Shown here: positions 37,165-43,519 of the stretch, one piece after another
How positions within the stretch are numbered: position 1 is the stretch's first letter
How the letters are laid out: each line of letters opens with the position of its first letter
The notes under the pieces: model-generated
Databases searched by the model: none
Seen by the model: only the letters and a program-made list of their open reading frames with translations
What the model was told of the DNA's origin: nothing
Translations under genes and position numbers: made by a program
Origin: Salisapilia sapeloensis CBS 127946
Lineage: Eukaryota; Protista; Oomycota
DNA length: 64,000 bases
Assembly: GCA_023334545.1 (NCBI GenBank)
Contig: JAADVB010000003.1
Coordinates: 1-64,000 of the forward strand
Direction of reading: 5' to 3'

Positions 37165-39403
37165 ATGCAACACGGAGGTGAGTTCTCGATCTCATTCGCG
37201 AATGGACCTATTACCTTTCGGACGGAAGAAGGCACGTTTTACAATAGGTTGTTTCAAATCGTACGTCTGTTCTTGATGGACTTGGCATCGAGTTTAGTAG
37301 CTTAGTGTGTGCAATATCATGCTAGGTGGATACGGATGAAGATGGGTATATTGGTGGGAAGGAAGGTGCTGAATTCATTCGTCGAGCGAGGCTTCTAAAT
37401 GACGCGAATCGAGAGGTAGGTGAGCAGGTCGAAGCTGTCATGATCGAGCTGATAGCGTAGATAGATATGGCGATTGGCTAGTGGAGGCAAGTCTCAAGGG
37501 AAGCTGAATAAGGACTCGTGGTTTGTCGCCATGAAACTCGTCGCTTTGGTCCAATGCACTGGTCAGTGTCAGATGCAGAGCTTGTATTCAGGTGAAGCGC
37601 TGCCGCTCGCGGACTTTCAGCTGGATCGTCCGCCAGATAATGAACTCCCAGATGACGGATTAACGGCAGAAGAACGCGGATCGTTCGACGTGTCCGTCAG
37701 TACCCCTGTCGTCGTTGGCACAGGATACTCTCGATACACGCAGTACGTCATCAACACAAAGGTAGAGCCATAGTGATAAGGCTGTGGAAGAGTACGCACT
37801 AATCTGGTTGGTACTGTATGTATTAGACGGATTTTCGGCATTTCCCATGTTCCAAAGCTCAGGTCAAACGTCGATTTAGTGACTTTGAGTGGCTACATCA
37901 ACGCCTGCTCATGCATTTCCGAGGCATGTACTTCCTGTCCGACTTTATTTTTTGTAAAAAGATATATAACACAATTGTGTTGGTAGGAACGATCATTCCT
38001 CCACTTCCAGAGAAGCGATGGACAGGGAATATGGACGCTACTTTTGTAGAGGAACGTCGTCAAGCACTAGAGCATTTCATTGTATATTCCCATTTGTCCT
38101 TCCTACCGAAGCACTATCCATAATACTTTATATTGTCGAGTAGAATGAAGTCTGTCGGCATGAAAAGCTCTCGCAGACTTTGGAGCTCCAGATCATGCTG
38201 ACTGCCAGCAATGAGGTACGACTGACTAACGATAAACCACCGATCTATACTCGTCTTATAGCATGCGACAGGGTCTACTCGCTGGGAAAGACATGTTAAA
38301 AATCCGTTCCATCGCTTCGAACTACGTCCCTACGTCCGCGACCGTGTCTTCTTTCTGGAACACCGTTCGTGACGGTGGTCTCTTTGCGTCTTCTGCACAG
38401 CAAGTGGACATCGAAACCGATGACGATTACGAAAAGATTGGAGAGCACATTGATGAGTACAAGAAACACATTACGGAAGTCAAGAGGTGCTCGGACTTGG
38501 TGTATGCTGCGCAACGTGCAGAAGGGTATGAGATGTCTCGTTTTGGCACGTACCTCACTGCGCTTTCGGAGCATGAGCGACAGGACGTGGACATGCGACA
38601 GCTCGCTGGTGCTGCTGGAGACTACTTTGAATCCGTCTCCAATGCCTATCAAGACCAGGTACATTGTATACGACCTAAGGATGGAGTAGTAGCTGATGTT
38701 AGTGCTTCTAGTTGGACAAATTGCTAGCCATGTATGTTTCCATTATCAGGTACCAGGCTGGTAAAGTGGATGCCGTCAAGGTACATCGTTCTTGTCTCCT
38801 TCCTCCTTGTTAATGGTACTGAAGTAGACGTTTGTAGACGGTCATGAGCAATCGTGATTCAGCTATTAGCGAAGTCCAGCAAGCGAATGCATCCATGCAG
38901 CGCAACAAGGAGCGCTTTGCCGCTGCACGCGCCAGTAGTGGAGCTGCTGCGTCTGCCATGCGTGCAGAGCAGAAGATGGCTTCGGTACGTCTTGTTTCTT
39001 ATCTGCAAATGAAAGCACAAGATTTAACACGGTTGATGGTTCTACTAGGCGGAGGATCGGATGAACCATGCGAAAGAACAAGTAGACTTTATAGCGTCGA
39101 GTCTCAAGGTTGAGTCGAAGAGGATGGAAGGAGGAAAAGCCGAGGAGCTCAAGAACGCTCTCTTGTCTCTCGCAAGCATCGAGCGTGACTATCATGCACA
39201 GGTACCTCGATCCTTCTTTATCGATTCATCCATAGATTGAAATGTTTGTGTGGTCCTAGGCGCGTACGACATGGGAAGATTTGATCCCAGCGCTTCAAGT
39301 GTCTGAGGAAGAAGTGGAGGAGAGTCGGCAACGAGCTATGCAGCAAGTACCTCACCGTGCTCCAGGCGAGAAAAGTGGCAATCATATCATTGGTCTGCTG
39401 TAG
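37165..39403 (+). CDS. Sorting nexin with EH-PX-BAR architecture
   Basis: EH: VDTDEDGYIGGKEGAEFI...IWRLA...FVAMKLVALVQ. PX: YTQYVI...KRRFSDFEWLHQRL...IIPPLPEK...ERRQALE. BAR-like helical C-terminus. Many introns. Confidence 0.85.
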
Positions 39404-39478
39404 GTTTGCACAATACAATCGTGGCTTTTAACGAGGATGTCCAAAACAATCATATATTTCCATGCCCACCTCCCCTGG

Positions 39479-42252
39479 CTACATGTCTGCGGCCATGTCG
39501 GATGTCGGCTCTCCATCCTTGGTCTCCGTCTCGACTTTACTATCTCCTGCTGTCTCCTGTTGGTCCTCGTCATTGTCATCGTCGACAACGTCTTGCGCAA
39601 GTGTATCTTGATCCGCAGCGCTTGTGCTCTCGACTTCGACATCAGCATCGGCGTCTGTTTCATCAAACTCTTCCTTGACATCGATCGTGTCGCCATCATG
39701 ATCGGCGTTCTCGTCTAGTTCGATGATATCGCCGTCTTCGAACTTGAGTCCGTCAAAGATCGACAGCTCTCCGTTGAGACTGAGCGACATGAATGGGTCT
39801 TGATCACCTTCCGTCGGTGTCGTCTCTGCAGTAGTAGACTCCGCACTGCCTTCAGCTGCATTGCTATCATCTTCCTCCTTTTCTTCTGATTTATCTGTCA
39901 TGTACTCCTACATTAATAGTTTATTAATATCACGAATATTTATCTTTATAATAGTTCCAATACCTTTTTGACTGGGAAGATGGCTTGTAGTCGTTGCTTG
40001 GCAAGTTGCTCCAATGCGTTTTCATCTGACTTGGGTGTCACTTGCGTCTACGTCATCAGGTTACTCGCCTGCTCCTTGCTAATGACTGGCATGTATGCTA
40101 GACAGTACCTTGTAGAGACTTTCTAGCCTCTTCATGCTCTTCTTTGCTCCTTGCTTCCCGCTCTTGAGTTTCACGCCATTCGCTAGTCGATCCACTTCCT
40201 TCCCACTGTCATTTGTTTTCGTCTTACTCCATTTCTCTAATAGTCGCTGGATATCTGCTGACACAGGTCCAACGCCTTTGAATCGTGGTCGCACAAGACC
40301 TTTCGCACAAGTCACCGTCGTCTTGTACTGATCGACAGTGTTTCCACTCGGTCGACACCAACATCCATTTGGCTGTTGACCGTTGATCAAAAAGTGTTCA
40401 ATCGTTTGGATCACCTGAGCAGCTCGTTCTTCCATTGCAGAGCCAAAGAGTTTCATGCATTGGAGATACTTTCCTAGGAGTTCATACTCGAGCTGCTGCA
40501 TGATCTGACTAACGATAGCGCCGTTGAAAATGAGTTGTACTTCTGGCTGGAAGAGCTCTGGTCGAAGTTGCAGCATACCAAAGTCACTCGCGACATCTAA
40601 GAGTCCAAAGATCATCCGCATCCTGTCAGTCAGAAGCAAAAGTAGCTTAGTTTATGCATTTGGAGAATAAAAAGAGAAAAAGGTACTGGTCAGAGAAAGC
40701 TTCCCATGGATGTCCAGCAGGATCCACTGGCTGTAAACCTTTATACAGTGATCGAACAGAGCTCGTGTGGCTAAAAACATCTTGTAGTGATGCACCGATA
40801 GAAATACCAACGCGTTCTCCCCAGTATGACGCTAAGAGTCCACTCGCATACTTTGTAAAGGTCGATGGGAACGCAAGTGGTCGTCGACATTTGCCGCAGG
40901 TATTCAACTATCTTCATGTTAGCACCTGACGTACTATCATGAGAACGTGTAGGAGCTCACCTCTGGCGAATTTCGGATCCCGCAGACGGTACACAAGGCC
41001 GAGCACCGTACTTGTGGTCCTTCTAGTCCTGGATGCCACCCGAGAAAGTCATTGACAGAGAACTGTTTTTCCTGTACGACGTGCTCTATCTTGTCCTTCA
41101 ACCCATGTGCGATACTCGTCTCTTGGAGACTATACAGTCCAATCATGTAGGTGAAAACGTCTCGTACGTTTAACTGCATCTTGTCTGCTTCCGACAGCTT
41201 CTCGCGCATCCATCGCTGCAAATATGGTTCGATGAACTTGGAAGCAAAGGGTTTTAAAGGATAGCCAGCCATTTCACCTATCTCATGCAGTCGCAAGGAC
41301 GCAAGGTGTCCGAATCGACTAAATGATTTATCTGTGTTCGTTTCCATATTTAAAAACAAAATCGCGCGTCGAATGGATAAACCTGCGATACCAGCTTTCT
41401 GCATATCCTCATCCTCATTATCAGACGACCTCGTCTGCTGCATGATGGCACAACTGCCACACAACTTGCCTAGCTGCGTACTTGTCAAGGTTTCTGGACC
41501 GATACACGCTGGATGGAATGCTAGACCACACCCACCAGCACATAGCTGAACGTCAGCATCACTCTTTTCGCATAATAGACACGTCTTCGGCTCTTCTGGC
41601 TTAGTGGCAGTCACTGCCGGTCTCTTTCCCGTCGCAGTGTTTTGTACTTTTGGCGCTAAAGCCTGTGTCTGTGCCTGCATTTGAAGCACATCCTCTTGCT
41701 TTGCTGCTGACTGAGCAGTGTTACTTTTCCACATTGTGTTCTGTTGCATCGGATATGAAGCCGATGCTGTATTGTAAGGTTGCAATCTGGACGCTTGTTG
41801 CATTTGTGGGTACGCTGCTTGCATGAACTGCATTTGCATTAATTGTGGCTGCTGAACTTGCTGACCGACAGAGGCGTTATTTTGCCAGTAGGATTGCTGA
41901 TACATGGTTGGATCTAAGACCATGAAGAGCGTATTAGTGCTGCTTGATGCGAATGAATATTGGAAGGAGGGCACGTACTGGCGTAGTTTGCCGCTTGTTG
42001 CGGTTGTACATTCTGCGTATCTGAACGAGGATGCACCGAAGACGCATATGCACCATTGGATGGCATGGTATTACCCATGGCATTCATCTGCACTTGCTGC
42101 GCAGCCACGTCGTAGCCATCGTCCGTCCGTGGTCTCTTCGACTGCTGTTCATCAGCCGAAGTCGTTGCATATAGACTCTGCAGACCTTCCCCTGCATCCA
42201 CAGAAGCAGGTACTTGTGTGCTCCAATGCGTTGGATCGCTCATACCTTTCAC
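39479..42252 (-). CDS. PHD-finger protein fused to a zinc-ribbon / QW-motif alpha-alpha toroid-like domain, with acidic tail
   Basis: C4HC3 PHD (CLLC..CAGGC....H..C..CGSC); CTVCGIRN..CGKC ribbon across an intron; FLINGQQPNGCW QW-like motif; Gln-rich N-terminus; acidic last exon. Confidence 0.75.
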
Positions 42253-42387
42253 TCAAGCCCGACGGATTGGTCCGCCGCCTGTAGTCGAACTCACGTGCGA
42301 GATATTTTGTGTCTTCTGATATTTACTTTTAAGGAAACGTACAATGTATTATGTGGAATAACACGAATTGTGACAAAGCAGATCGAG

Positions 42388-43519
42388 ATGCTCGCGATTA
42401 GTGTGGCGAAGCGTTCTGGTGCGAGCAAGTACATTGCTAAGCGATGCATGTCCACGGTAGTGGATGATGAAGTGCGTAAATTTAATGAGGCATCTTCGTA
42501 CGGTTTTTAGAGTGTCAAATGGCATGATTTGGAGTTCGAAATGGAGTATGACCATGGTATTGCTTGATTTGTAGAGATTGGTGGACGCCTGGTGCTCGAA
42601 CAGGCTTTGGACCGTTGCATGATATCAATCCTGTGCGTGTCAAGTACATTCGTGAGCATGTCATCAAGCATTTCAAGGGCAGTATGAACGACCCCGAACC
42701 GCTCACGGGCTTCCATGTCGCTGACGTCGGATGTGGAGGCGGGCTTCTCTCCGAGGTAGAAGCATTCTTACGTACAGACTGCGCTCAAATGGTGATACCA
42801 AGTGTTCACATACGTAGTCCTTATGTCGTCTTGGTGGTTCCATGGTTTCGGTCGACCCTGGTGAAAGCAATATTGCCATGGCAAAGAAGCACGCGATGAT
42901 ACATCCACGCACGAGAGATATTGAGTACCGTTGTGCAACATCCCGTACGTTTATATCTATTTCTTTTGTTATCTATGTGCTTAAAATCTCGTACCGTTAT
43001 AGACGACTTGGTGAATGAGTCTGCTCAATTCGATGTTGTCTGCTCCTTGGAAGTAGTGGAGCACGTATCAGACGTGACAGAATACCTCCACTCTCTCACT
43101 GCACTCGTCAAGGTGCTATACTATTTACCTTATATCCCTATGACTATCCTAACTGATAAATATTGGAATCATCCAGCCTGGTGGACTTTTGTTCATGTCG
43201 ACTATCAACCGCACTCCACTGGCTGCAGCTCTTGCTGTTGGCGCAGCAGAATACGTCCTTGGTGTCGTTCCTCCTGGGACGCATGACTGGCGAAAGTTCG
43301 TCCAGCCAGAGGAAATCACGTCGGTGCTACAAGAGGTATAAGCGATCTAGTACTGCTGTACGTGCAAAGGTGTGACGACTATGTTTGTGAAATTGATAGG
43401 ATGGATTAGCTGTGCGGGATATCTCTGGCATTGTTGGCAATCCGATCTGCAACGACTGGAAGATTGACCCGGACATGACGGCGATCAACTACATCCTATG
43501 TGCATCCAAACCGCTTTAA
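42388..43519 (+). CDS. COQ3: Ubiquinone biosynthesis O-methyltransferase
   Basis: EVRKF...WW...GPLHDINPVRVKYI, ADVGCGGGLLSE, FDVVCSLEVVEHV, GTHDWRKFVQPEE; basic N-terminal presequence. Confidence 0.95.

What the first reader, a model, noticed from the sequence alone, without database searches (positions are those of the whole stretch)
39479..42252. PHD finger fused to a zinc-ribbon/QW-motif toroid domain of apparent bacterial affinity
Behind a Gln-rich region and a C4HC3 PHD finger lies a ~330-aa globular domain with a CxxCGxxN..CxxC ribbon, YWGERVGISIGASLQDV, LRPELFQPE, LLGKYLQCMKLFG and FLINGQQPNGCW...QYKTTVTCAKGL. The last fits the QW motif of prenyltransferase/terpene-cyclase alpha-alpha barrels. 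From memory (unverified) it resembles an uncharacterised bacterial family that has YAxTHxxYxLxD where this protein has FGLLDVASD, so the active site may be altered. A chromatin-reader plus toroid-enzyme fold plus acidic tail would be an undescribed nuclear protein type.
Basis: partly seen in the sequence, partly recalled or inferred. Interest (0 to 1): 0.7.

Follow-up and report, generated by a model that had tools for sequence, protein, structure and literature searches.

The report
PHD finger fused to remodelled toroid
An expressed oomycete gene joins a histone-reader (PHD) finger to a barrel-shaped domain inherited from a bacterial enzyme family whose conserved catalytic-looking residues have been replaced, and relatives of this barrel are fused to other chromatin modules across stramenopiles, pointing to an undescribed chromatin-associated domain.

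Summary
On the minus strand, 42243..39479 is one six-exon gene of 821 aa. Spliced transcript contigs from three runs join all six exons at the predicted GT..AG sites.

The protein has these parts:
- a Gln-rich N-terminus;
- a C4HC3 PHD finger;
- a ~357-aa domain with an embedded CxxC-x10-CxxC zinc ribbon;
- a basic helical linker;
- an acidic tail with one strongly conserved motif.

An AlphaFold2 model of the Phytophthora oleae ortholog (58% identical, gapless; pLDDT 92) is an (alpha/alpha)6 toroid. It matches MstE and squalene-hopene cyclase at Z 14, and Acidobacteriota DUF6895-like proteins at TM 0.84. Profile-profile comparison with that bacterial family gives 99.9% probability (E 1.8e-35, 337 columns, ribbon included).

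The invariant bacterial polar residues are replaced in all oomycete orthologs by other conserved residues: two His, Glu, and three Asp become Gly, Lys, Lys, Gln, Asn/Asp and Leu.

In other stramenopile proteins the same toroid is fused to ARID, Tudor-like, chromo, TFIIS-N and DEK_C domains. A DEK_C-toroid-TFIIS-N paralog lies elsewhere in this genome; the scan had already noted it there.

My best reading is a chromatin-tethered toroid with a remodelled pocket, probably non-catalytic, whose ligand is unknown. I class it as a new variant of a known kind (DUF6895 superfamily).

The parts
41979..42243 (-). Exon 1 (ATG at 42243): N-terminal low-complexity region and start of the Gln-rich stretch
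   Evidence: Gene model. The 41913/41979 junction is in spliced contigs of runs X1-X3, and the contigs reach 42291-42298, giving a 5' UTR of at least 48 nt with no upstream ATG.
40961..41913 (-). Exon 2: Gln-rich region, PHD finger, first ~150 aa of the toroid, first CxxC of the zinc ribbon
   Evidence: junctions 41913/41979 and 40907/40961.
40687..40907 (-). Exon 3: second CxxC of the ribbon and the middle of the toroid (YWGERVG...)
   Evidence: The six-frame profile hit is 2.3e-19.
40109..40622 (-). Exon 4: C-terminal third of the toroid (altered His-motif, QW-like motif, QYK motif) and the basic linker
   Evidence: 9.4e-42. The 40621/40686 junction is also spliced in run X5, which comes from a ~96% identical relative.
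39964..40047 (-). Exon 5: 28 codons of the helical linker
   Evidence: junctions 40047/40109 and 39906/39963.
39479..39907 (-). Exon 6: acidic tail and stop codon (39479-39481)
41450..41581 (-). PHD finger, residues 200-243, with C4HC3 ligands
   Evidence: All eight ligands are invariant or nearly so in 21 orthologs. The ortholog profile matches AIRE PHD1 at 4.5e-10, and also NSD2, CHD4 and PHF21A. The window sequence alone is below the Pfam cut-offs. The ortholog model has pLDDT 85-91 here.
40223..41410 (-). (alpha/alpha)6 toroid domain, residues 257-613 (spans introns 2 and 3), a distant DUF6895-superfamily member
   Evidence: Ortholog model pLDDT 92.3, pTM 0.91. VIA gives Z 14 to MstE, SHC and GH-type barrels. 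TM 0.84 to Acidobacteriota DUF6895 clusters. hhalign 99.9%, E 1.8e-35.
40887..40993 (-). Embedded zinc ribbon C396-x2-C399-x10-C410-x2-C413 (spans intron 2)
   Evidence: The four Cys are invariant in oomycete orthologs and in 97-100% of 120 bacterial homologs at the same alignment position. Bacterial members hit the Pfam Zn_Ribbon_1 and DZR families.
40583..40609 (-). FGLLDVASD: the position of the bacterial (Y)AxTHxxYTLND motif, where Thr-His has become Phe-Gly (G486)
   Evidence: Column table: His in 100% of 120 bacterial sequences, Gly/Ser/Thr in oomycetes.
40358..40393 (-). QW-like motif FLINGQQPNGCW (residues 557-568)
   Evidence: Exact F-L-x3-Q-x3-G-x-W pattern. This stretch of the family profile matches squalene-hopene cyclase at 1e-22.
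40295..40330 (-). QYKTTVTCAKGL: the position of the bacterial RYHxTWTAIDGL motif, with His replaced by K580 and Asp by K587
   Evidence: both Lys are invariant in 11/11 oomycete orthologs.
39905..40222 (-). Basic linker (24% K+R), residues 614-680; a candidate nuclear localisation region
   Evidence: Composition. In the ortholog model, two helices modelled after the toroid have pLDDT 65-92. They probably correspond to this linker by the tail alignment, but I did not map their exact window residues. The linker is conserved in the tail alignment. The NLS role is inferred.
39716..39793 (-). Conserved linear motif in the acidic tail (residues 718-743, ...SLSLNGELSIFDGLKFEDGDIIEL)
   Evidence: Aligned in all 14 oomycete tails, including Saprolegnia and Aphanomyces. 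It is not docked in the ortholog model, where pLDDT is 31-47.
39482..39904 (-). Acidic tail, residues 681-821, 36% D+E

Best explanation
This is one expressed gene for a nuclear, chromatin-associated protein that is conserved in all sampled oomycetes. Its parts work as follows, with the status of each step marked.
- A PHD finger, whose closest solved relatives are histone-H3-tail readers, tethers the protein to chromatin (inferred).
- The ~357-aa domain behind it is an (alpha/alpha)6 toroid with an inserted zinc ribbon. It is homologous over its whole length to a soil Acidobacteriota family in the DUF6895 superfamily (shown).
- In the oomycete PHD-type lineage the polar residues that never vary in the bacterial proteins are replaced by other residues that are themselves conserved. 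Two His, a Glu and three Asp become G486, K580, K531, Q534, N565 and L292, and an Asp becomes K587 (shown).
- The pocket is therefore remodelled from acidic with two His to Lys-rich, and it stays under strong purifying selection (shown for the residues; that they line one pocket is inferred).
- I read the toroid as a non-catalytic binding module, a pseudoenzyme, for a peptide or small anionic ligand that is still unknown (inferred).
- The basic linker supplies nuclear import, and the acidic tail with its conserved ...LxIFDGLKFEDG... motif recruits a partner (inferred).

The same toroid is fused to ARID, Tudor-like, chromo, TFIIS-N and DEK_C modules in other stramenopile proteins. This supports a chromatin or transcription role for the domain as such.
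For: One gene, expressed:
- Five GT..AG junctions sit in single contigs of three runs.
- One junction is also in a ~96% identical relative.
- No intronless copy is in the genome.

PHD finger:
- The ligands are invariant.
- The profile matches solved PHD fingers at 4.5e-10.

Toroid fold:
- The AF2 model of the 58%-identical, gapless ortholog has pLDDT 92.3.
- All 50 top VIA rows are (alpha/alpha)6 barrels, with Z up to 14.1.
- Nearly all top Foldseek hits are alpha/alpha-barrel proteins, such as squalene-hopene cyclases, MstE, AprG, transcobalamin and glycoside hydrolases.

Bacterial kinship:
- phmmer gives 1.5e-6 against 1.84e9 proteins.
- hhalign gives 99.9%, E 1.8e-35, over 337 columns.
- TM is 0.84/0.83 to Acidobacteriota DUF6895 clusters.
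- The ribbon is shared.
- 257 loci were found in GTDB genomes, nearly all of them Acidobacteriota.

Remodelled site: see the column table of 120 bacterial versus 12 oomycete sequences.

Constraint:
- The domain is 58% identical across oomycete orders.
- Synonymous to nonsynonymous differences are 20:0 in the toroid.

Chromatin link, with Pfam matches over cut-off:
- ARID in P0013, P0016, P0022, P0023 and P0070.
- PHD plus DUF6895 plus ARID together in P0070.
- Chromo in P0037.
- Med26/TFIIS-N in P0020, P0025 and P0035.
- DEK_C plus toroid plus TFIIS-N in this genome.
- Atlas clusters: Oomycota Med26+DEK_C, and Chlorophyta DUF6895+Nse4_C.
Against: - No ligand, partner or localisation has been shown.
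- I had no model coordinates, so it is inferred, not shown, that the replaced residues line one pocket.
- The catalytic residues of the one characterised DUF6895 enzyme are unknown to me, because the paper is not held. 'Catalytic' therefore rests on bacterial invariance only.
- Conserved Lys, Glu, Arg and Tyr residues (K580, K587, E386, E507, R458, Y461, Y579) could still form an active site.
- The window's PHD alone is below the Pfam cut-offs and lacks the usual Trp before the last Cys pair.
- The tail motif is not docked on the toroid in the long model.
Confidence: 0.58

Rival explanations
1. The toroid is still an enzyme that acts on chromatin proteins or another nuclear substrate. It would use a new catalytic set, for example K580/K587 with E386/E507/Y579, and the PHD finger would deliver it to nucleosomes.
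For: - The replacement residues are invariant across oomycetes, and the domain is under strong constraint.
- A DUF6895 member is reported as a peptide epimerase (title cited in PMC13352647).
- Med26-type relatives (P0025, and P0035 from Tribonema gayanum) keep both His and the acidic residues, so an active eukaryotic ancestor is plausible.
- (alpha/alpha)6 barrels host many enzyme types.
Against: - Six or seven of the invariant bacterial polar residues were lost together, with charge reversal.
- The branch leading to the oomycete PHD-type group is long.
- The paralog in this same genome has also lost both His at the aligned positions.
Confidence: 0.27
2. The toroid is a small-molecule sensor, for example of an isoprenoid, sterol or phosphorylated metabolite, that couples metabolic state to chromatin through the PHD finger.
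For: - The fold and the QW-like motif are shared with terpene cyclases, and transcobalamin-type ligand carriers are among the fold matches.
- Lys-rich replacements would suit an anionic head group.
- Peronosporalean oomycetes take up sterols; this point rests on established knowledge and on the elicitin gene noted in the window.
Against: - There is no DxDD motif and no second cyclase domain.
- The family also occurs in Saprolegniales and ochrophytes.
- There is no direct evidence for any ligand.
- This reading overlaps the best explanation and differs only in the class of ligand.
Confidence: 0.1
3. The architecture is an artefact: two neighbouring genes (a PHD protein and a toroid protein) read as one, or a contaminating bacterial fragment in the assembly.
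For: The nearest non-eukaryotic relatives are bacterial.
Against: - Single spliced contigs join all six exons in three runs.
- The toroid itself is split by two spliceosomal introns.
- The same architecture occurs in more than 25 oomycete species.
- In the tree the eukaryotic sequences lie on one side of a fully supported branch.
Confidence: 0.01

Closest known systems
Acidobacteriota zinc-ribbon/DUF6895-like proteins (e.g. the Pyrinomonadaceae and Bryobacteraceae hypothetical proteins P0076 and P0093; Pfam PF21836 in part of them)
   Same: - Homology runs over the full length (hhalign 99.9%, 337 columns).
- The (alpha/alpha)6 fold is the same (TM 0.84).
- The zinc ribbon is inserted at the same place.
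- The RPY, PE, GSW and Y motifs are shared.
   Different: - The bacterial proteins are stand-alone, 340-400 aa, and many begin with a hydrophobic stretch that I read by eye as signal-like; this was not tested.
- They keep the invariant His-His-Glu-Asp-Asp set, which the window protein has lost.
- They have no PHD finger, Gln-rich region or acidic tail.
- Their function is unknown, and the two gene neighbourhoods I examined showed no conserved context.
DUF6895 family lasso-peptide epimerase (Shi et al., ACS Catal. 2026, 16:1757; known here only from its title as cited in PMC13352647 and PMC13453073)
   Same: It belongs to the same Pfam superfamily by transitive evidence. 16 of the 60 aligned relatives match PF21836, and P0023, P0025 and P0070 pass its cut-off.
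   Different: - The window protein does not itself match PF21836.
- I could not read that enzyme's sequence, catalytic residues or mechanism.
- It acts in a bacterial RiPP pathway, not in a chromatin setting.
Single-domain class II terpene cyclases and squalene-hopene cyclase (MstE 6sbb, 8paj/8pak, SHC 1gsz)
   Same: - The (alpha/alpha)6 toroid fold matches (Z 13.8-14.1, 254-264 residues aligned).
- One exact QW-type motif is present.
- The family profile matches SHC at 1e-22 over that motif.
   Different: - There is no DxDD proton-donor motif.
- There is only one QW repeat and no beta-gamma didomain.
- Sequence identity is about 10%, and TM only 0.43-0.46 by Foldseek.
- Glycoside-hydrolase and epimerase barrels score about equally well.
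DEK_C-toroid-TFIIS-N paralog of oomycetes (this genome, G000:C25; Atlas cluster of 62 Oomycota proteins)
   Same: It has the same toroid (TM 0.79; profile hits 2e-13 and 2.7e-8) placed in a protein with chromatin or transcription modules.
   Different: - It has no zinc ribbon and no PHD finger.
- It is flanked instead by DEK_C and a TFIIS N-terminal domain.
- Ochrophyte members of this type keep both His, but the copy in this genome does not.
PHD fingers of AIRE (PHD1), NSD2, CHD4 and PHF21A
   Same: The C4HC3 spacing is the same, and these are the best profile matches at 4.5e-10 to 3e-7.
   Different: - The oomycete finger has Leu where most PHD fingers have Trp before the last Cys pair.
- Ochrophyte relatives keep the Trp.
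- Binding specificity is untested.

Membership tests
Pfam DUF6895 (PF21836) | Match to the family HMM at or above the gathering score (23.8 bits) | tested here: not met
   There was no match at E<=1 for the window's exon translations. The ortholog domain P0001:250-615 gave none. The six-frame search of the genome gave none, but the control genomes were silent too. Relatives P0023 (27.2), P0025 (26.4) and P0070 (25.2) pass.
Pfam DUF6895 (PF21836) | Homology to family members by profile-profile and structural comparison | tested here: met
   hhalign of oomycete versus Acidobacteriota alignments gives 99.9%, E 1.8e-35. TM is 0.84/0.83 to Atlas clusters that carry PF21836. Language-model look-alikes score 0.93-0.94 to DUF6895 clusters.
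Pfam DUF6895 (PF21836) | Conserved polar constellation of the bacterial relatives (His in ..TH.., His in RYH, Glu-x2-Asp, Asp of NPDGSW, Asp in the helix 2 motif) | tested here: not met
   The window has G486, K580, K531, Q534, N565 and L292 at these columns. Whether these are the catalytic residues of the characterised epimerase could not be checked.
Class II terpene cyclase / squalene-hopene cyclase (PF13243, PF13249) | (alpha/alpha)6 toroid fold | tested here: met
   Z is 14.1 (MstE), 14.0 (SHC) and 13.8 (8paj) on the ortholog model.
Class II terpene cyclase / squalene-hopene cyclase (PF13243, PF13249) | QW motif | tested here: met
   There is one copy, F-L-x3-Q-x3-G-x-W at residues 557-568. 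The family profile matches SHC at 1e-22 through this stretch. The basic residue and Gly/Ala that usually precede the motif are absent.
Class II terpene cyclase / squalene-hopene cyclase (PF13243, PF13249) | DxDD general-acid motif | tested here: not met
   There is no D-x-D-D in residues 257-613.
PHD finger (PF00628) | C4HC3 ligand pattern with canonical spacing | tested here: met
   The pattern is C-x2-C-x9-C-x3-C-x4-H-x2-C-x14-C-x2-C, counted from the finger sequence at residues 200-243. The ligands are invariant or nearly so in 21 orthologs.
PHD finger (PF00628) | Match to the family model | tested here: inconclusive
   The window alone scores 14.3 bits against a cut-off of 24, and related PHD models give E 0.004-0.04. 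The ortholog profile matches solved PHD fingers at 4.5e-10, and relatives P0029 and P0070 pass Pfam cut-offs.
PHD finger (PF00628) | Binding of a histone tail | not testable with these tools
   This needs peptide arrays or ITC.
Zinc ribbon (PF13240 / PF12773) | Two CxxC knuckles about 10 residues apart | tested here: met
   C396-x2-C399-x10-C410-x2-C413 aligns with the ribbon of bacterial homologs, 9-10 of which hit PF13240 or PF12773. The window pieces alone give only weak LSD1-type hits, because the ribbon is split by an intron.
TND-interacting motif (TIM) of transcription elongation factors | Short helix, acidic linker and optional FxGF, as described in PMC9987994 | tested here: inconclusive
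   The tail motif contains I-F-D-G-L within an acidic stretch and is conserved. The order and spacing of its elements were not shown to fit. The complex prediction with the paralog's TFIIS-N domain gave no verdict.

The most novel reading that the evidence does not exclude
The DUF6895-like toroid would be a previously unrecognised chromatin or transcription domain of stramenopiles, and possibly of green algae. On this reading it descends from a bacterial peptide-modifying enzyme. Forms with the intact His pair (the TFIIS-N type of ochrophytes) would still modify histone or polymerase-associated peptides, for example by epimerisation. The oomycete PHD type would have become a reader of that or another mark.
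Probability: 0.15. Interest if true: 0.85.

Novelty: new variant of a known kind. Interest (0 to 1): 0.6.

Why it matters
Chromatin proteins are built from a fairly closed set of reader, writer and eraser domains. Here an (alpha/alpha)6 toroid from a bacterial enzyme superfamily turns up repeatedly next to PHD, ARID, chromo, Tudor-like, TFIIS-N and DEK_C modules. It is under strong constraint and is expressed.

If the domain binds or modifies a chromatin component, it adds a new module to that set. It would also give a lineage-specific handle on gene regulation in oomycetes, a group that includes major plant pathogens.

The graded loss of the conserved residues is also a natural series for studying how an enzyme becomes a binding module. 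The residues are intact in ochrophyte TFIIS-N forms, partly lost in ochrophyte PHD/ARID forms, and replaced in oomycete PHD forms.

Tried and rejected
- Direct family scans of the exon translations (Pfam, NCBIfam) gave nothing for the globular domain.
- A six-frame search of the genome with PF21836 found nothing. Its control genomes were silent too, so it is uninformative.
- The word-based protein search with the 317-aa exon-2 piece was blank, because full-length relatives fall outside its length range.
- The window's own protein was not returned by any search. The spliced sequence has no reference, so I used it only inside scripts and folded the P. oleae ortholog instead.
- Class II terpene cyclase membership is rejected because there is no DxDD.
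- I tested whether the tail motif binds the TFIIS-N domain of the paralog. The complex prediction score was 0.02, which is no verdict and counts neither for nor against.
- I tested whether the tail motif docks in cis. In the 706-residue ortholog model the tail has pLDDT 31-47, so there is no support.
- Two long Acidobacteriota contigs showed no shared neighbours or RiPP-like cluster.
- The DUF6895 epimerase paper is not held. No paper mentions PITG_17075, and none describes a toroid-PHD chromatin protein.
- The direction and date of any bacteria-to-eukaryote transfer could not be settled. Bacteria and eukaryotes are two sides of one branch and there is no outgroup.
Full report
**1. Gene and expression**

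The region holds a minus-strand gene with five short GT..AG introns.
- Joining exons 42243-41979, 41913-40961, 40907-40687, 40622-40109, 40047-39964 and 39907-39479 gives an uninterrupted 821-codon frame.
- Contigs from three public runs of one study (X1-X3) match the window without a mismatch. They skip exactly these five intervals within single records of 4.2-4.3 kb.
- They reach 42291-42298 at the 5' end. The first ATG of the transcript is therefore 42243.
- A fourth run from a ~96% identical relative (X5) carries the 40621/40686 junction.
- The runs are only guessed to be RNA. However, the genome holds no intronless copy, so these contigs are best read as cDNA.
- The PHD and toroid exons therefore belong to one transcript.
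- Of 35 coding differences from the relative, 30 are synonymous. All 20 inside the globular domain are synonymous.

**2. What the protein contains**

Along the protein:
- residues 76-180 are 27% Gln;
- residues 200-243 form a C4HC3 finger;
- residues 257-613 form the globular domain;
- residues 614-680 are 24% Lys+Arg;
- residues 681-821 are 36% Asp+Glu.

The finger scores below the Pfam cut-offs on its own. Its eight ligands are invariant or nearly so in 21 orthologs. The ortholog profile matches solved PHD fingers: AIRE PHD1 at 4.5e-10, then NSD2, CHD4 and PHF21A. In a long ortholog model the finger has pLDDT 85-91.

**3. Relatives**

Exon 4 alone, searched against 1.84 billion representatives, finds only 38 proteins at E<=1e-3.
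- The best are full-length orthologs in Phytophthora, Bremia, Peronospora, Plasmopara, Peronosclerospora, Pythium, Lagenidium, Albugo, Saprolegnia and Aphanomyces. All are annotated as hypothetical or 'Zinc finger PHD-type domain-containing'.
- The window's domain is 58% identical to Phytophthora oleae P0001:253-609 without a single gap.
- In a tree the window sits in the clade that holds Phytophthora, Bremia, Plasmopara, Pythium and Lagenidium, apart from Saprolegnia and Aphanomyces.
- An elicitin-like gene noted nearby by the scan fits an oomycete.

The weaker hits are ochrophyte proteins (Florenciella, Tribonema, Discosporangium, marine transcriptomes). In them the same domain sits beside other chromatin modules, with Pfam matches over cut-off:
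- ARID in P0013, P0016, P0022 and P0023;
- PHD plus DUF6895 plus ARID in P0070;
- a chromodomain in P0037;
- a TFIIS N-terminal (Med26) domain in P0020, P0025 and P0035;
- a sub-threshold Tudor-like match in P0016.

**4. Bacterial kinship**

- One hit, P0018, belongs to a large family of 340-400-aa proteins of Acidobacteriota (Pyrinomonadaceae, Blastocatellia, Thermoanaerobaculia, Bryobacteraceae).
- That family gave 201 hits in the protein search and 257 loci in species-representative genomes, often several per genome.
- The joint alignment is collinear from end to end. It places the oomycete CxxC-x10-CxxC ribbon exactly on a ribbon of the bacterial proteins.
- Profile-profile comparison of oomycete-only and bacteria-only alignments gives 99.9% probability, E 1.8e-35, over 337 columns.
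- Of the 60 aligned sequences, 16 match Pfam DUF6895 and 39 weakly match SQHop_cyclase_C. The window protein and its oomycete orthologs match neither.
- Language-model look-alikes point to the same clusters.
- In the tree, bacteria form one side of a fully supported branch. The eukaryotes fall into three groups: oomycete PHD type, ochrophyte PHD/ARID type and TFIIS-N type.
- Without an outgroup, the direction and date of transfer remain open.

**5. Fold**

- The model has pLDDT 92.3 and pTM 0.91 and is all-helical.
- Foldseek finds mostly alpha/alpha-barrel proteins, at weak E-values (best 0.015, TM 0.43-0.46).
- The exhaustive aligner gives Z 14.1-13.8 for a putative glycosyl hydrolase (3k11), the terpene cyclase MstE, squalene-hopene cyclase and 8paj. 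All 50 rows are (alpha/alpha)6 barrels covering residues 5-344.
- Z values of this size are common for helical repeats. I take them to show the fold class, not a particular enzyme family.
- Against predicted structures, the model matches Acidobacteriota DUF6895 clusters at TM 0.84/0.83. It matches an Oomycota cluster with Med26 and DEK_C domains at 0.79, and a Chlorophyta cluster with DUF6895 and Nse4_C at 0.76.
- The family profile matches squalene-hopene cyclase sequences at 1e-22 through the QW-like stretch. The window has the exact pattern F-L-x3-Q-x3-G-x-W there, but no DxDD anywhere in the domain.

**6. The altered site**

Across 120 bacterial members several polar residues never or almost never vary. 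The table gives what the window has at each.

| Bacterial residue | Window | Note |
|---|---|---|
| His of ..YAxTH.. | G486 | |
| His of RYH | K580 | invariant in 11/11 oomycete orthologs |
| Glu of GEFLD | K531 | |
| Asp of GEFLD | Q534 | |
| Asp of NPDGSW | N565 | |
| Asp near the N-terminus | L292 | |
| Asp of AIDGL | K587 | invariant in 11/11 oomycete orthologs |
| Tyr three residues after the first His | D489 | |

- The residues kept are E386, E507, R458, Y461, W568, Y579 and the four ribbon Cys.
- The TFIIS-N-type proteins of ochrophytes keep nearly the whole bacterial set.
- The ochrophyte PHD/ARID type keeps about half.
- The substitutions in oomycetes are themselves conserved and shift the charge from acidic to basic.
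- Together with the 20:0 synonymous ratio, this argues for a remodelled, still functional site rather than decay.
- I could not inspect coordinates, so it is inferred from their invariance that these residues surround one cavity.

**7. Paralog in the same genome**

- A profile search of the whole assembly finds this locus and one other, on contig C25.
- There a DEK_C domain (8.8e-10), a ribbon-less toroid and a TFIIS N-terminal domain (2.7e-16) lie in consecutive exons.
- That copy has Thr at the first His column, with a His one helical turn upstream. It has Tyr at the second His column.
- An earlier first-stage note of the scan had flagged the same architecture in this genome.

**8. Tail**

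- The acidic tails of all oomycete orthologs, Saprolegniales included, share one block...LTSMSLNxDLxIFDGLKFEDGDxID... (window residues 718-743).
- It loosely recalls the helix, acidic linker and FxGF make-up of TND-interacting motifs (PMC9987994).
- A complex prediction with the paralog's TFIIS-N domain gave no verdict.
- In a 706-residue ortholog model the tail is disordered (pLDDT 31-47), while two helices after the toroid are well predicted.
- The partner of the motif is therefore unknown.

**9. Reading and rivals**

- The anatomy, the fusion partners of the toroid across stramenopiles and the basic linker point to a nuclear, chromatin-bound protein.
- I favour a non-catalytic binding role for the remodelled toroid (0.58).
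- Second is a retained but rewired enzyme (0.27), and third a small-molecule sensor (0.10).
- The artefact reading is excluded by the RNA evidence.

**10. Novelty**

- The searched literature holds only two papers that mention DUF6895. Both cite a 2026 report of a lasso-peptide epimerase, which I could not read.
- Nothing turned up on the Phytophthora infestans ortholog or on toroid-PHD chromatin proteins.
- The fold and the superfamily are known. The eukaryotic, chromatin-linked branch with a replaced site appears undescribed.
- I therefore rate it a new variant of a known kind, with interest 0.6.

Noticed in passing
G000:C25:30600-32650 (locus L007:2100-4140, + strand): This is a paralog with DEK_C (8.8e-10), a ribbon-less toroid and a TFIIS N-terminal/Med26 domain (2.7e-16) in consecutive exons. 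The aligned His positions read Thr and Tyr. The scan had already noted this architecture (s1-303238).
   Followed up: partly
window 39300 and below (the 3' side of the gene): The spliced contigs of runs X1-X3 continue about 1.5-2 kb beyond 39300. That takes them into the convergent neighbouring gene, which the scan noted as an EH-PX-BAR sorting nexin at 37165-39403. The 3' ends of the two genes therefore abut or overlap, or the assembler merged them.
   Followed up: no
window 42377-43400, + strand: A divergent neighbour starts about 130 bp upstream of this gene's 5' end. Separate contigs cover 42377-42497. The ORF at 42564-42899 carries a VADVGCGGGLLSE stretch typical of SAM-dependent methyltransferases.
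   Followed up: no
runs X5-X7 (organism B), laid on window 39300-42500: A relative about 96% identical at the DNA level is present in three 2025 studies. It differs at 35 coding sites, 30 of them synonymous. The five amino-acid changes all lie in the acidic tail.
   Followed up: partly
P0037 (ENA contig of 15.5 kb, organism unknown): Here the toroid is followed by a chromodomain (58 bits). The sequence sits on a long branch next to the oomycete PHD group in the tree.
   Followed up: no
ESM Atlas cluster, Chlorophyta (fold search row 4): Green-algal proteins of about 856 aa carry DUF6895 together with Nse4_C (the SMC5/6 kleisin C-terminus), at TM 0.76 to the model. This may extend the chromatin link beyond stramenopiles, or it may reflect fused gene models.
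   Followed up: no
L010-L089 (GTDB genomes): The bacterial family is almost confined to Acidobacteriota MAGs and is multi-copy in some; for example, three loci come from one Pyrinomonadaceae MAG. Single titles name Clostridia and Alphaproteobacteria bins.
   Followed up: no
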